From Auanema rhodensis (lineage: Eukaryota; Animalia; Nematoda), in assembly GCA_964057225.1 (NCBI GenBank), contig OZ059895.1, positions 6,200,001 to 6,264,000 on the forward strand: a stretch of DNA of 64,000 nucleotides, read 5' to 3'. Positions 1 to 6,186 of this stretch are shown piece by piece. The notes beneath the pieces are model-generated. The model was given only the letters and a program-made list of their open reading frames with translations. It was not told where the DNA came from and ran no database searches. Numbering within the stretch: position 1 is the first letter of the stretch; every line of letters begins with the position of its first letter. A program made the position numbers and the translations under genes.

Positions 1-1166
1 GAAAGTAATTTTCAAAACTTTTTCCAATTTGTCTCTATTGCCGAGTTTACCGAGAAGTTCTGTATTTATAATATAAATGCACCAGGGCAAGAAGTTGATG
101 CGCAGGCTATCTCGGAAAGGTTTGTCTTAACGTTATTTCAATAGTTCAATATTTTTTCAGCTTCATTTACCCTTCTATGGATGGTCTAGCAAAGATTGTT
201 GAATCTGTTGTTGATCATTACAAGTAAGTTACATTGAAACATTTAATTTCCTTATCTTCAATTTGTAGCCTCAGCACTTTTATCGCTTTTGGTGTAGGGT
301 TGGGAGCTAATGTTTTACTCAGATACACGGTATATCATTAATGTTTTTATGTCCTGAACACGTTTAGTTTTACAGCTAGTTAATCAAAACAGAGTAAACG
401 CTCTTATACTTGTCAATTGCACAATTGCTCAAGCAGGATGGATTGAGTGGGGTTATCAAAAGGTTTTTTATTTAAAAAGAACAGAATACTCATCTCCTTT
501 ATAATAGGTTAATCTTCACAACTTACGTACTCATGGTATGACTAACTTCACCGTCGATTACCTCATGTGGCATCACTTTGGTCGTCGCCTTGACGAATGC
601 AGCACAGATATTGTTCGTCAATACAAAGTGTATTTCCAGCATTTGCCAAATCCAGTCAATCTTGCTGCTCTAATTGAATGCTATTTGAAGTATGTTCAAT
701 TTGATGTGTAATTTTTGTAATGTTGTTCCTTTTAGTCGTTCCTCAATCATGATGTCTCGTGATGGAAATGCCGGACCTCAATTAAAGGTTCCCGTTCTAC
801 AAATTGTTGGTGCCGGAAGCGCTTTTGTAAATGATACTGTATCAGTAAATACTGCATTGGATCCTTCAAGATCCGATTGGATTAAGGTTCTTGAAAACAA
901 AGTGCAAATACAACTTCAGGTTTATAATTCCAGATTTCGGACTCATGTGGGTTAGTTCTCGATGACAGACCAGAAGCTGTGACTGAAAGTATGATGCTGT
1001 TCTTGCAAGGGTTGGGATATTGTAAGTCTATCTAATAAATTTCCGTTGAGAAATTGATTAATTGATTTCAGTCCCTACCATGAATGTTGTTAAGTTGATG
1101 AAGAAAATTCATGAAACTCAATCAGGATCTTATGCCGCCGTTTCTGAAAGCCTTAACGAGTGCTAA
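1..1166 (+). CDS. NDRG/Ndr-family alpha/beta-hydrolase-fold protein, 3' part (multi-exon, 5' end outside window)
   Basis: Spliced translation gives NFQNFFQF...INAPGQE...FIAFGVGLGANVLLRY...AGWIEWGYQK...LKVPVLQIVGAGSAFV...SDSCGLVLDDRPEAVTESMMLFLQGLGY, typical NDRG motifs; TAA at 1164-1166; short GT-AG introns. Confidence 0.9.
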
Positions 1167-1679: not shown

Positions 1680-4600
1680 ATGCAAACCATAGACAATTTG
1701 AATGAATTTTGGTCTGATCCAGTAGTCAATTGGTTCGATTACTTTGTTAATCGATCAAAGTTTAATGAATTGCTCGAAGATACGAAGAAAAATAAAGGTT
1801 TTCATTGAAAATACACCATAAGGTAAATGCAATATTTAAAGATACAATCATATCTTTGGCTTTGCAATTTTGCGAACAAGCAAGTGTAACTGAGAAGGAA
1901 TATGATGTTATGGCTCAGAAATCTTTCCCAGCTGAAGATCTTCAGTTTATTCAGCGGAAATCCATCTGTCTATGGCTATGTTCCCTGTCCTGTTTAGCTT
2001 CCTTAAATTGGGACATTGAGTTATTGATAGACAAGCAGTATGTCTTCAGTTTGCCATGCTTTCCTTATCTTTGTTATTAAGAGATGTTTTGGCGGTTAGA
2101 CCACTCATGGACTATATCGAACGATTATGGTTGAATCGTGAAATCGTCACGGATCCGATATTTGGGGAATGGCTTCATGCACGTTGGATATTTAGTTTAG
2201 ATCGTAGGTTCCGAGTATTGTCTCCACCAGCTAAACAAATTGTTAATAATCCGTATGTCTAAATTAGAAAAAAAAAGAAAAGTTATTCGTTTAGATTACA
2301 AGTACAAGATCTCAATTTGCAAAGACAAGAGGGTATTCGTAAACTTGTTCAAGAAGCCCGAGATTTGCGGATGATTCGGGTATGATTTCCCAAATAAATG
2401 CATAAATAAGTTAGTTTGATTATAGGCTCTCGATTTCCTTGAGAAACTTATCAGTGACCCAAAGCAGATTTATGTACCTGGAACTATGTGTTTCCTTCAA
2501 CCGTTTCTTGAGGTTTTTATTAAATAGAGTAAACATTCTTTTATCGTATTGTTGTAGGAGTCTGGATTCTCACTGAGTGTAGGAATTTTGGGAACAAATG
2601 TTCTATTCGATTCTCCTCCAAAACCAAAACTTACCTATGAATGCACACTTCTGGATCCAAAAGAAGTTATAAATAAGGTAAGGACGAGTTATAGTATATT
2701 GCTATATTGAAAATTTTAATTTAATTTAGACACGATACGATTTGGCTTGCTATTACTTCTCCGAAGGTAGATTAGACCGATGTTTAGCAAATATGCTGAA
2801 TGTATGTGTGCAAAATATTCTATTATTGCACTATTCTAATCTATTTTAGACAAAAATTAATATTGGGGAACATCCCTTAGTTACTGTATCATATGAAGAT
2901 CTTGTAGGATATTATATAGCTCTTCACATTACTCCGTCTTTTCCTATTAAGGAGTTTCCTAAATTAATGGTTGTTGATCAAAATGTATTTAAGCAATATG
3001 ATTCTTTTCTTCTAATTTACGAAACTTTAGTTATTGAAAAATGAAACATCAGTTTATCGAAGACGGTCTGTATATCGCGGACGAAGTGAGAACATTGCCA
3101 CCGGACAACTACAGGCAAGCTTGTCATCTTGAAAGAAAAAATTTAAAATGCATTCGTTTTAAAAAGAGTTATTTCAGACTTCTATCCGAGCTGATAACTT
3201 GGTACGAGATGTTTTAGAGGGTAAGAATAGTTTAAATCGAATACATCTTAAAGAAAAAGCCATCCTTGAAAAGTTTGTGAAGGTAATATCACATTCTTTG
3301 TTCAATTTAAACAATTATTTCTGGATTACATTTTCAGACATTAGCTCAATCTTTGCCTAGAATAAACCGATTAAATAGTTTGTATCTACAAGGAACTTTA
3401 CGATTTTTATCGTTTTCCATACCCGGACTTAGAGAAGAATTAATTCGAAACAACTTTCCTGAAGAATACCTTTGTGGTGCTCATCAACCTATTGTTGAGA
3501 AAACTTTTGCAGCTCCTGGTATTTCCATTATAAAAGGTGAGTCATCAAGCTGCTTCGAATAATATTGAATGGAGAGGATTTCTGTTTTTTTTTATTTTTT
3601 TTATTTTCAAATCTTAAAAGTTGAGCTGGAGACTAGTCTGAATTGTGTTTTCTTAGCGATCGCACTCAGGAATTGCCAGTCGGGAGTGTCTCAGAACCCC
3701 GCAGGGTAACCTTTTTCTGGCACACTCCCTCATTCCTTCGAATGAGGTCCTTCTCGAACCGAAATGACTTTATCTCAGACCTTCCCGGGGATACAAGGCT
3801 ACATGAGCCTGTGAGTGAACCCCAACGCTGTCTTCCAGCCAACTCGTGTGTTGATTGACTAGGCCTGTCTATATAGCCACTGTGTCATTTGCGCCGTATG
3901 CGATACGAGTTTGAATTGTACATCAACTGATCAATACAGTCTAAATAGATTTTGAAAGAGAGAGATTGTTGCCTTATAGAGACAATATTCATGCGTTTGA
4001 AACAGAAATAGATAATTTTTTGGTCTTTAATATATTTTCACGTTGAAAACAAGAGTCAAACAGCGTTCATCCTAAGAACATCATCATAACGCACAAACAA
4101 CGCAAATTACTTTGTTTTCTGCTCTTTCGAGAGTTAAAAGGAATCGAATATGAATTCAATTAACACATTTATTTAAGTTTTACTTGCTTCTGATGTTCCA
4201 TTATGGAAAATCATCGCATCTTTCGATGTCGGTGAGTTAAAGGAAACTGTGAACAGCATGAAACACTTCTCTCTTCCGAGACTAGTGAGTTAGTATCTTA
4301 ATAAATTCTCTTAACTATAAGTTCTAGCTTAAATATCCGGAGTTGTTAGGAGAATATGTACTTGTCGGTAGACCAATCAACGACTTTCATGCTTTATTGC
4401 TTGGTAAAATGAACCAATTAGCTCAAATAGGTGTAAGTTGTTTCTATGAAAGGTGGAATTATTTAAACGTGATGTTCCTATTTAGAATCACCAAGATTGG
4501 CAGCAGTTTTGTAATAATATCGTAACTGAATTAGGTCAGCTAGGTAATCAAAATAGAATGCGATTTGTATTAGAAGTATGTGTCTAATTTTTATATAATA

Positions 4601-6186
4601 CTATAATCACTTTTCTAGGCTTTGAACGTTCAATCGGCTATCCTTAATAAGAAGTTAAATGTTAGCTTTGAATCTTCGGGTACTCAGCTCATACAAACGC
4701 ATTTGAAAGCAACTAAAGGATGCTTTGTTAATCCTCAAGCTGTCAACATTCCACATTCTCATGAATTCTGTAGTCAAGTTAGGCATTCAAATCAATTCTC
4801 TCTAATAATTATAATTATTTAAGGTATTAGCTCTGTGTTTAAACGCCAAAGAATGGGAGTTTGTAATAAACAGGCTTGAGTAAGTTTGTTTCGATTTTTT
4901 AATTTTAAAGTTTTCCTAAATTGTTAGTTTACCTATTTGATTTTAGCCTTAACGTACCAATCATGACAATTGTCAAACTCATAGCTGCTTTTGGACAGCA
5001 TGGAAATAACCCTGGAATGAAAAAGCTGGCAGATGCTTGGACTTCTCAGCTCAGTCCTCTCTTCGAGAATTCAAGGCATGTGTGATCAGAGTAATTTTTT
5101 TATTTCTATAACTTATAGAAAAAGACATAATGATGGAGCTGGTCAAAGAGAAAACTTTAAAATGCGAATTGAGATCATCAAATTCTTAAAACTTGTCAAG
5201 GCAAGATTCCTTTAAAGAATTTCATATATAAGAGCATTCAGGAACCAAATCTTCTACCATTCTTAATATCATTTTTCGCTTTCATGTTCAATAGAGTATT
5301 AGTAGCTGAACGAAAACCGCAACTTAGGATATTTGTTCAACAATCTGATCTTTTTGGAACAGAAACCGAGTATTTTTATACTAATCAGCATCTAAACAAT
5401 CAAACTATATTTAGATTACCGAATGCTTCTATTGATGCTATTGAAGAATGTTTACAAATTGTTCTTCAAAATGGATTTGAAGTAAATCCTGTAAATGCAT
5501 TCTGGCTAAGAACTGCAGCTGATTACAAATACGGTAAACTTTATTAGAAAAATACTAAACCAAAGAAGTGTTCAGCTAGAGGTGAACTAGAGGAATCAGC
5601 AACTTTATACATGGAAACTTTATTAGCTTGTAAATCATCATTGATCGTTCCTTTCCCAGAAAATGTTATTGATGATTCGGTAATTGTATAATCTTTTTCT
5701 CATTTTGTCCATTTTGTCTCAAGGTATGGCTTCGGCTTCGTACATGCTTTACCCGATCTTCGTGCCACATGTTGGCATTACTGATCTGTCAACTTCTTCG
5801 AACTAAGAAAGAAGAAGAATATATGAAAATGACTGAGGTTGATTGTTTGTTTTTTTGTTTTTTTTTCAAATACATAAGTTAAGATTCTAAATGCTCAAGC
5901 TTGTATGGATGCTGGTGAAGAATGTTATTCCATGGTATTCGATCATACTATGGCTGAATATCTAAGTCAATCCTTAGATCAGAATAAGCAAGCAAACAAT
6001 TTAGATCGATTAGTTAGTTGATGGACATTTGTTATTTTAATGACTTATTATTTTCAGTTATCTTGGTGTTCTCGGCCATCTCTAAATCCTAACAATCGCA
6101 TGGAAATTTTTACTCGGGAACAGTGTCGAAGAGCTGAACGCATGATTCGGGTAATGGCAGCCCAGATATTTGCTGTTCATCTTTAA
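1680..6186 (+). CDS. ints-8: Integrator complex subunit 8 (many short exons)
   Basis: N-terminus WFDYFV...LALQFCEQAS and C-terminus LNPNNRMEIF...RRAERMIRVMAAQIF resemble INTS8 (WFEFLL...QFLEQAS; LNASN...RRKKKFLQAMAKLYF); internal VKEPNLLPFLISFF and WLRTAADYKY; frame stays open across ~40-60 nt introns; TAA 6184-6186. Confidence 0.82.
3616..3619 (-). terminator. Pol III oligo-T terminator of the RNase P RNA
   Basis: TTTT on the - strand immediately after the 3' strand of P1. Confidence 0.65.
3620..3845 (-). ncRNA. rpr-1: Nuclear RNase P RNA (~226 nt), antisense inside INTS8 intron 3537-4177
   Basis: Minus strand: P1 AGUUGGCUGGAAGAC pairs with GUCUCCAGCUCAACU; CR-I GGGAAGGUCUGAG (3786-3774); CR-V ACACAAUUCAGACUA forming the P4 pseudoknot; P3 GGGG..CCCC; P9 CCUCAUUC-GAAG-GAAUGAGG; P10/11 GGGAGUG..CACUCCC enclosing AGAAA and UGAGA; CR-IV GGCAAUUCCU. 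Confidence 0.93.
3868..3910 (-). promoter_or_regulatory. External Pol III (type 3) promoter of the RNase P RNA: TATA box plus GC-richer PSE-like element
   Basis: CTATATAG at 3868-3875 lies ~25-30 nt upstream of the RNA 5' end, preceded on the - strand by CTCGTATCGCATACGGCGCAAATGACAC at the position where a PSE is expected. Confidence 0.6.

What the first reader, a model, noticed from the sequence alone, without database searches (positions are those of the whole stretch)
3537..4177. Self-contained RNase P RNA gene antisense in the only long intron of Integrator subunit 8
Seen: the other INTS8 introns are ~40-60 nt but this one is 641 nt, and it holds a complete RNase P RNA on the opposite strand with its own TATA, PSE-like element and T4 terminator. 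Known: insect and crustacean RNase P RNAs are often sense-intronic and Pol II-derived, while most other animals use stand-alone Pol III genes; Integrator terminates Pol II at snRNA genes. Inference: a highly active Pol III unit lying head-on inside INTS8 could act as a roadblock or cause interference, coupling INTS8 dosage to Pol III activity. A protein-only annotation would miss it.
Basis: partly seen in the sequence, partly recalled or inferred. Interest (0 to 1): 0.78.

Follow-up and report, generated by a model that had tools for sequence, protein, structure and literature searches.

The report
RNase P RNA gene inside INTS8 intron
This nematode's gene for the catalytic RNA of RNase P, with its own promoter, sits backwards in the one long intron of the Integrator subunit 8 gene; four parasitic strongylid worms keep it in the same intron facing forwards, so the nesting is old and real, but nothing here shows that it regulates the host gene.

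Summary
Rfam RF00009 (nuclear RNase P RNA) matches window 3621-3842 on the minus strand at 124.5 bits (threshold 28) over the full model.

- **Host gene:** the plus-strand gene is INTS8 (Pfam TPR_INTS8 on three collinear exons; collinear with strongylid INTS8). The RNA lies in intron 3537-4177 (641 nt). The other 21 introns are about 37-67 nt.
- **Pol III signals:** TACGGCGC at about -53, TATATAG at -30, and TTTT right after the 3' end.
- **New here:** Haemonchus, Ancylostoma, Parelaphostrongylus and Angiostrongylus carry RNase P RNA in the same INTS8 intron (same codon, same phase) but on the sense strand. The TACGGCGC box, its spacing to a TATA-like box and the T4 are conserved.
- **Other relatives:** in Gnathostoma the RNA lies 1.2 kb downstream of INTS8. 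Mesorhabditis (both contigs) and one unnamed species have none there.

I read it as an autonomous Pol III gene in an inherited nest, inverted in this lineage. The roadblock and dosage-coupling idea is untested, and the variable orientation and the losses weigh against it.

Where C. elegans rpr-1 lies relative to ints-8 stays unresolved.

It is a known kind of gene in a known kind of arrangement, with a modestly interesting conserved host intron.

The parts
1680..6186 (+). INTS8 (Integrator subunit 8) host gene, ATG to stop, 23 exons in my manual model
   Evidence: Pfam TPR_INTS8 on exons 5173-5544, 5548-5688 and 5878-6018. tblastn of Haemonchus and Ancylostoma INTS8 (P0015, P0016) is collinear from 1680 to 6180. 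Splice sites were read.
3338..3536 (+). INTS8 exon upstream of the long intron; ends in phase 1 just after a conserved K
   Evidence: Aligns to P0015 residues 412-446.
3537..4177 (+). INTS8 intron 11, 641 nt, GTGAGT...TTTAAG, the only long intron of the gene
   Evidence: Same codon position and phase as the RNase P-bearing intron of four strongylids.
3621..3842 (-). RNase P RNA body as matched by Rfam. The likely transcript is about 3845 to about 3617, because P1 can extend by 3 pairs.
   Evidence: RF00009 at 124.5 bits over the full model. Fold z-score -3.6. 22 of 60 consensus pairs show compensatory changes across 5 species.
3616..3619 (-). TTTT run immediately after the RNA 3' end (Pol III terminator-like)
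   Evidence: A T4 lies 1-6 nt after the 3' end in all four strongylid orthologues.
3869..3875 (-). TATATAG box, first T about 30 nt upstream of the likely +1 (G at 3845)
   Evidence: A TATA-like box stands in the same alignment columns in the strongylids.
3891..3898 (-). TACGGCGC, PSE-like box at about -53 to -46
   Evidence: The only occurrence in the 64-kb window, against 0.12 expected. Invariant and at the same distance from the RNA start in the five species.
4178..4284 (+). INTS8 exon downstream of the long intron
   Evidence: Aligns from P0015/P0016 residue 463. Reading frame checked.
538..955 (+). 3' exons of an Ndr-family gene just upstream of INTS8 (context: conserved Ndr-INTS8 synteny)
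   Evidence: Pfam PF03096. The same gene order is seen in Mesorhabditis, Parelaphostrongylus, Haemonchus and Ancylostoma.

Best explanation
The stretch holds the organism's nuclear RNase P RNA gene, the catalytic RNA that trims tRNA 5' leaders.

**How it is made (inferred).** It is an autonomous RNA polymerase III gene with an external, U6-like promoter. A SNAPc-type proximal element (TACGGCGC, about -53) and a TATA box (-30) set the start near 3845 on the minus strand. A T4 run ends the transcript near 3617, giving a compact RNA of roughly 226-230 nt.

**Where it sits (shown).** The unit is nested antisense in intron 11 of INTS8, which is long only because it houses the gene.

**How it got there (shown, then inferred).** Four strongylids keep RNase P RNA in the orthologous intron with the same promoter architecture but on the sense strand, so the nesting is inherited. 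I infer that the unit was inverted within the intron in this lineage or in the strongylid one. An inversion inside the intron harms neither gene, because the RNA gene does not depend on host transcription.

**Why it persists (inferred).** Rearrangement breakpoints inside a host gene are selected against. I do not think it persists because the two genes regulate each other.

**Status of the steps.** Shown: identity of the RNA, host gene, intron orthology, orientation, and conservation of the boxes. Inferred: Pol III and SNAPc usage, transcript ends, expression, and neutrality of the nesting.
For: - **RNA identity and constraint:** RF00009 at 124.5 bits over the full model, with CR-I, CR-II/III, CR-IV and CR-V intact. 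Compensatory changes occur in P1, P3 and other helices across five species.
- **Promoter:** TACGGCGC is unique in the window. It is invariant at fixed spacing to a TATA-like box and to the RNA start in the window and four strongylids.
- **Terminator:** a T4 follows directly after the 3' end in all five.
- **Same intron, opposite strand:** RF00009 hits lie on the sense strand inside INTS8 of Ancylostoma duodenale, Parelaphostrongylus tenuis, Haemonchus contortus and Angiostrongylus cantonensis, between residues 462 and 463 in each. Identical phase and codon were read in the window and in Haemonchus, Ancylostoma and Parelaphostrongylus, and the same exon end in Angiostrongylus.
- **Literature:** nematode Pol III snRNA-type loci carry a SNAPc motif plus a TATA box (PMC6436959). 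C. elegans intronic ncRNA loci that have an upstream motif are expressed independently of their host (PMC2527325). The C. elegans rpr-1 upstream region alone drives guide RNAs (PMC3814388). A centipede RNase P RNA gene with Pol III signals also lies antisense in an intron (PMC4287351).
Against:
- Pol III and SNAPc binding is inferred from sequence alone. No other SNAPc-dependent gene lies in the window for comparing the box.
- The same host intron is retained in species whose RNase P RNAs are only 69-75% identical, and the RNA lies next to INTS8 even in Gnathostoma. That is more linkage than I would expect in fast-rearranging nematode genomes, so selection on the arrangement is not excluded.
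- A second RNase P RNA copy elsewhere in the genome cannot be ruled out from one window.
Confidence: 0.75

Rival explanations
1. The highly active antisense Pol III unit acts as a head-on roadblock or source of interference for Pol II transcribing INTS8, so INTS8 output is tuned by Pol III/SNAPc activity.
For: The geometry is right: an antisense Pol III-type unit sits in a host intron. A tested precedent exists in the antisense Pol III-occupied MIR in the first intron of mouse Polr3e, which lowers Polr3e expression by transcriptional interference (PMC5358760). The RNase P RNA-INTS8 association is old.
Against: Orientation is not conserved, since it is sense in four strongylids. The RNA gene is absent from INTS8 in both Mesorhabditis contigs and in one unnamed species. 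C. elegans intronic ncRNA loci with their own motifs show expression uncorrelated with their hosts (PMC2527325). No occupancy or expression data exist for this locus.
Confidence: 0.12
2. The intronic copy is a decaying or silent duplicate, and the working RNase P RNA gene lies elsewhere in the genome.
For: Only one 64-kb window was examined, and expression was not verified.
Against: The score is higher than for any strongylid orthologue. All conserved regions and the P4 pairing are intact. Helices change by compensatory pairs. Promoter boxes and the T4 are kept at exact spacing. The scan's own index lists only RNase MRP candidates elsewhere in this genome, not another RNase P RNA (unchecked notes).
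Confidence: 0.04
3. As in insects and crustaceans, the RNA is cut out of a Pol II transcript. Here that would have to be an antisense transcript through the intron rather than a Pol III product.
For: Insect and crustacean RNase P RNAs are intron-derived Pol II products (PMC4287351).
Against: The RNA is antisense to the host, so INTS8 pre-mRNA cannot supply it. It has the PSE, TATA and T4 that the insect and crustacean genes lack. No minus-strand protein gene spans the intron.
Confidence: 0.02

Closest known systems
Nuclear RNase P RNA genes of animals with external (type 3, U6-like) Pol III promoters, e.g. human H1 RNA and C. elegans rpr-1
   Same: Rfam RF00009 architecture, an upstream PSE-like box plus a TATA box at about -30, and a short T-run terminator. 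The C. elegans rpr-1 upstream region is autonomous enough to drive guide RNAs (PMC3814388).
   Different: It is very compact: 222 nt matched, with a short P12 and no helix at model positions about 252-270. It is nested in a protein-gene intron rather than intergenic.
RNase P RNA gene of the centipede Strigamia maritima (Manivannan et al. 2015, PMC4287351)
   Same: [quoted passage not shown]
   Different: It is in a different phylum, and the text I read does not name the centipede's host gene. Here the host intron is shared with other species, where the orientation is sense.
Insect and crustacean intron-embedded RNase P RNA (Drosophila ATPsynC intron)
   Same: The RNase P RNA is located in an intron of a broadly expressed Pol II gene. 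The strongylid relatives even share the sense orientation.
   Different: The insect and crustacean genes lack PSE, TATA and terminator and depend on the host promoter. The window copy is antisense and, like its strongylid orthologues, keeps all three signals.
Antisense Pol III-transcribed MIR in the first intron of mammalian Polr3e (Yeganeh et al. 2017, PMC5358760)
   Same: A Pol III unit nested antisense in an intron of a gene of the transcription machinery.
   Different: According to the paper's abstract, the MIR and its antisense placement are conserved in mammals. Here orientation varies and the unit is missing in some relatives. The nested unit is an essential RNA gene rather than a repeat, and no interference has been measured.
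C. elegans intronic small ncRNA loci with their own upstream motifs (UM1/UM3; Li et al. 2008, PMC2527325)
   Same: Independent small-RNA genes inside introns, with a PSE-type motif with or without a TATA-like box, and termination at TTTT.
   Different: Those are mostly snRNA-like, snoRNA or stem-bulge RNA loci. Whether the TACGGCGC box equals the C. elegans PSE sub-motif was not tested here.

Membership tests
Nuclear RNase P RNA (Rfam RF00009) | Covariance-model score above the curated gathering score over the full model | tested here: met
   124.5 bits against 28, model positions 1-301, not truncated. It is the best member of clan CL00002, so it is preferred over RNase MRP.
Nuclear RNase P RNA (Rfam RF00009) | Conserved regions CR-I and CR-V forming P4, plus CR-II/III and CR-IV | tested here: met
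   The alignment shows the CR-I and CR-V blocks close to the consensus, CR-II and CR-III motifs in the P10-12 region, and CR-IV. The P4 columns are paired in all five species.
Nuclear RNase P RNA (Rfam RF00009) | Helices maintained by compensatory changes among orthologues | tested here: met
   22 of 60 consensus pairs have double changes that keep the pair, across the window, three strongylids and Gnathostoma.
Nuclear RNase P RNA (Rfam RF00009) | Expressed RNA that associates with RNase P proteins and is needed for pre-tRNA cleavage | not testable with these tools
Pol III type 3 (external promoter, SNAPc-dependent) gene | Proximal sequence element at about -50 to -65 | tested here: inconclusive
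   TACGGCGC at -53 to -46 is unique in the window and invariant in position in five species. That it is the SNAPc site is inferred, because no other snRNA-type gene of this genome was available for comparison.
Pol III type 3 (external promoter, SNAPc-dependent) gene | TATA box about 25-30 nt upstream of +1 | tested here: met
   TATATAG at 3875-3869, 30 nt before the G at 3845.
Pol III type 3 (external promoter, SNAPc-dependent) gene | Run of at least 4 T at the 3' end | tested here: met
   TTTT at 3619-3616, one base after the Rfam 3' end. The same holds in four strongylids.
Pol III type 3 (external promoter, SNAPc-dependent) gene | Occupancy by Pol III, TBP and SNAPc | not testable with these tools
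   No ChIP data are reachable.
Insect/crustacean-type host-dependent intronic RNase P RNA | Sense orientation in the host intron and absence of Pol III signals | tested here: not met
   The copy is antisense, and PSE-like box, TATA and T4 are all present.
Polr3e-MIR-type regulatory interference | Antisense Pol III unit in a host intron | tested here: met
Polr3e-MIR-type regulatory interference | Arrangement, including orientation, conserved among relatives | tested here: not met
   The intron is conserved, but orientation is sense in four strongylids. The unit is absent in Mesorhabditis and one unnamed species.
Polr3e-MIR-type regulatory interference | Pol II accumulation at the unit and a change in host mRNA when the unit is removed | not testable with these tools
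   This needs NET-seq or ChIP and genome editing.
INTS8 (host gene) | Pfam TPR_INTS8 domain and collinear similarity to INTS8 proteins | tested here: met
   PF25756 on three exons in profile order, the best at 61 bits against 27. P0015 and P0016 (956 aa, TPR_INTS8_3 plus TPR_INTS8) align collinearly over 1680-6180.

The most novel reading that the evidence does not exclude
The RNase P RNA-INTS8 association is kept by selection across rhabditid nematodes: the same intron in the window species and four strongylids, and adjacency in the spirurid Gnathostoma. The reason would be that a SNAPc/Pol III-bound unit inside or next to INTS8 modulates output of this Integrator subunit, or Integrator acts at the PSE-bearing unit. 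Either would link the machinery that serves PSE-type promoters to Pol III activity. The natural sense, antisense and absent variants would then differ measurably in INTS8 transcription.
Probability: 0.1. Interest if true: 0.7.

Novelty: new member of a known kind. Interest (0 to 1): 0.38.

Why it matters
The RNA gene itself is routine: any Rfam scan finds it, and independent small-RNA genes nested in introns are common in nematodes.

What is worth keeping is the comparative result.
- One specific INTS8 intron has hosted the RNase P RNA gene since before this species and the strongylids split.
- Both orientations occur, and the promoter is conserved.
- The unit has been lost from the nest in other lineages.

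This gives a natural series (sense, antisense, adjacent, absent) for two tests. One is whether a strong Pol III unit affects a host Pol II gene. The other concerns the switch to host-dependent expression in insects and crustaceans: the strongylid state is a promoter-bearing RNase P RNA gene lying sense in a Pol II intron, which is the kind of intermediate such a switch would need.

It also matters for annotation. The 641-nt intron is not a mis-assembly or a missed exon.

Tried and rejected
- **Reads:** There is therefore no read evidence for the minus-strand RNA or for splicing.
- **Automatic gene model:** a naive splice-chaining script produced a wrong model that even read an 'exon' through the RNA gene. 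I rejected it in favour of manual, homology-guided exon placement.
- **Promoter scan:** the sigma-70 and intrinsic-terminator scan is irrelevant for a eukaryote.
- **Protein searches:** a phmmer search with one 97-aa exon gave only 10 weak hits. Three word searches reached strongylids only, never Caenorhabditis, Pristionchus, filariae or clade IV.
- **Metagenome scans:** two DNA-pattern scans gave no hit and then one chance hit without an RNase P RNA.
- **Literature:** searches for the genomic position of C. elegans rpr-1 relative to ints-8 (Y48G10A.4) found nothing. No paper in the library links RNase P RNA and INTS8.
- **Other signals in the intron:** a weak SNORD58-like match at 4062-4092 (19.8 bits against 42) is taken as chance. 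Short AT-rich inverted repeats flanking the unit are too weak to claim as traces of the inversion.
- All searches used single exons by reference.

Full report
**Observation.** A scan of the whole window against Rfam gives one hit at gathering score. It is RF00009, nuclear RNase P RNA, at 3621-3842 on the minus strand: 124.5 bits against a threshold of 28, E 2.5e-35, covering model positions 1-301 without truncation. A more permissive scan of 3400-4300 reproduces it and adds only a sub-threshold snoRNA-like match that I take as chance. The alignment shows CR-I and CR-V (the P4 strands) close to the consensus, the CR-II/III motifs and CR-IV. P12 is short, and the helix at model positions about 252-270 is missing. 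The RNA is therefore compact, at 222 nt matched. P1 can extend by three more pairs, to about 3845 and 3617. The stretch folds better than all 200 shuffles, with z = -3.6.

**Host gene and intron.**
- Three collinear plus-strand exons hit Pfam TPR_INTS8 in profile order: 253-339, 339-375 and 408-451. The best scores 61 bits against a cut-off of 27.
- Full-length strongylid INTS8 proteins (956 aa) align collinearly from 1680 to 6180.
- Reading the splice sites with the frames and that homology, I place 22 introns. Twenty-one are 37-67 nt. The remaining one, 3537-4177, is 641 nt.
- Two introns (3115-3177 and 5201-5241), and possibly a third, need GC-AG boundaries.
- An automatic chaining script gave a wrong model and was discarded.
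- The gene upstream (538-955) is an Ndr-family gene.

**Anatomy of the RNA gene on the minus strand.**
- TACGGCGC lies at 3898-3891. It is the only copy in 64 kb, against 0.12 expected.
- TATATAG lies at 3875-3869, 30 nt before the G at 3845.
- TTTT lies at 3619-3616, one base after the Rfam 3' end.
- This is the layout of an external-promoter (U6-type) Pol III gene. Nematode Pol III snRNA-type loci are reported to combine a SNAPc motif with a TATA box (PMC6436959).

**Relatives.** A phmmer search with one exon, followed by word searches, returned INTS8 proteins of named nematodes. I fetched their loci and scanned them with Rfam.
- RNase P RNA lies inside INTS8, on the same strand as INTS8, in four strongylids:

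| Species | Locus and position | Bits |
|---|---|---|
| Ancylostoma duodenale | L006 14285-14505 | 122.9 |
| Parelaphostrongylus tenuis | L004 18276-18520 | 117.7 |
| Haemonchus contortus | L005 15652-15895 | 107.6 |
| Angiostrongylus cantonensis | L010 15084-15327 | 108.2 |

- In all four the RNA sits between the exons that end at residue 462 and start at residue 463 of the Haemonchus protein.
- In the window, the exon ending at 3536 aligns up to that point and the exon starting at 4178 aligns from residue 463.
- The intron interrupts the codon right after a conserved lysine, in phase 1, in the window and in Haemonchus, Ancylostoma and Parelaphostrongylus. In Angiostrongylus the upstream exon ends after the same lysine. 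It is the same intron, with the RNA gene flipped.
- An ungapped alignment of the upstream regions shows TACGGCGC invariant, and a TATA-like box and the RNA start in the same columns in all five species. All have a T4 within 1-6 nt of the 3' end. The sense-oriented strongylid copies are therefore also self-contained Pol III-type genes, not host-dependent ones.
- The window RNA is 69-75% identical to the strongylid RNAs. Across five species, 22 of 60 consensus pairs carry compensatory changes.

**Other relatives.**
- In Gnathostoma spinigerum (L003) an RNase P RNA of 304 nt scores 98.5 bits and lies 1.2 kb downstream of the INTS8 stop on the same strand. It has no obvious TATA box or T4.
- Both Mesorhabditis spiculigera contigs carry compact INTS8 genes after an Ndr gene and have no RNase P RNA within the loci. 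The orthologous intron there is under about 100 nt.
- An unnamed low-GC species (L007-L009) also lacks it.
- The Cooperia contig starts just after the relevant intron and is uninformative.

**Interpretation.** The best-supported reading is an autonomous Pol III RNase P RNA gene in an inherited nest.
- The unit was inverted within the intron in this lineage or in the strongylid one. That is harmless if the RNA gene has its own promoter.
- The intron is long only because it holds the gene.
- Nested genes tend to stay put because breakpoints inside a host gene are costly. That alone can explain the conservation.
- Published work agrees with independence. C. elegans intronic ncRNA loci that have an upstream motif are expressed independently of the host (PMC2527325). 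The rpr-1 upstream region alone drives guide RNAs (PMC3814388).

The head-on roadblock has a real precedent in the antisense MIR in Polr3e (PMC5358760). The geometry fits here, but orientation is not conserved, the unit can leave INTS8, and nothing was measured. I give it about 0.12.

**Comparison with known cases.**
- The RNA is a member of RF00009 by every sequence test I could run.
- The arrangement has a direct precedent in the centipede Strigamia, where a Pol III-type RNase P RNA gene lies antisense in an intron (PMC4287351).
- It is not the insect and crustacean type, which is sense and lacks Pol III signals.
- I found no paper linking RNase P RNA and INTS8. The shared host intron may therefore be unreported, but the library is incomplete and genome browsers may show it.

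**Limits.**
Those places were not sent to any search tool afterwards.
- SNAPc and Pol III use is inferred from sequence.
- The position of C. elegans rpr-1 relative to ints-8 (Y48G10A.4) could not be established with the tools and papers at hand.
- Taxon sampling is limited to what the protein searches reached.

**Verdict.** The identity and self-contained nature of the gene are supported and strengthened by comparison. The regulatory coupling remains speculative and is weakened by the comparative data. It is a new member of a known kind, with a modestly interesting conserved nesting. Interest 0.38.

Noticed in passing
window 3115-3177 and 5201-5241 (possibly also 5074-5118): Homology-guided exon placement requires GC-AG introns in INTS8. 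No GT is available in 5201-5241, and only a GC donor at 3115 keeps the frame that matches strongylid INTS8. Two or three GC donors in one gene is unusually many.
   Followed up: partly
window 538-955 (+); L002, L004, L005, L006, L012: An Ndr-family gene lies directly upstream of INTS8 on the same strand in the window, Mesorhabditis and three strongylids. This is conserved microsynteny around the host gene.
   Followed up: partly
L003 4234-4537 (+), Gnathostoma spinigerum: This 304-nt RNase P RNA lies 1.2 kb downstream of the INTS8 stop on the same strand. It has no TATA box at -30 and only TTT after its 3' end. How it is transcribed is unclear. A TACGGCGC box sits about 140 nt further downstream on the opposite strand, inside an inverted repeat.
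   Followed up: no
L004 13022-13095 (-), Parelaphostrongylus tenuis: A tRNA gene (37 bits) lies antisense in another intron of the same INTS8 gene, so a second Pol III unit is nested in the host.
   Followed up: no
L010 26847-27125 and 30420-30698; L001 9925-10054 and 15872-16000: INTS8 exons appear twice, which points to a local duplication or an assembly artefact. In Angiostrongylus it is the exon for residues 618-682. In Cooperia a second copy of the last exon lies 6 kb downstream.
   Followed up: no
window 3578-3587 / 4000-4009 and 3592-3611 / 3996-4015: Short AT-rich inverted repeats (10 nt perfect; 20 nt at 75%) bracket the RNA gene unit. They could be a trace of the inversion, but they are weak enough to be chance.
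   Followed up: no
window 3578-3610 (+): A long T-rich tract lies on the INTS8 sense strand just downstream of the RNA gene's terminator side. It reads as an A-rich tract on the RNA gene's strand. Its function is unknown.
   Followed up: no
window 4062-4092 (-): A sub-threshold SNORD58-like match (19.8 bits against 42, E 0.26) lies upstream of the RNase P RNA promoter within the same intron. It is probably chance.
   Followed up: no
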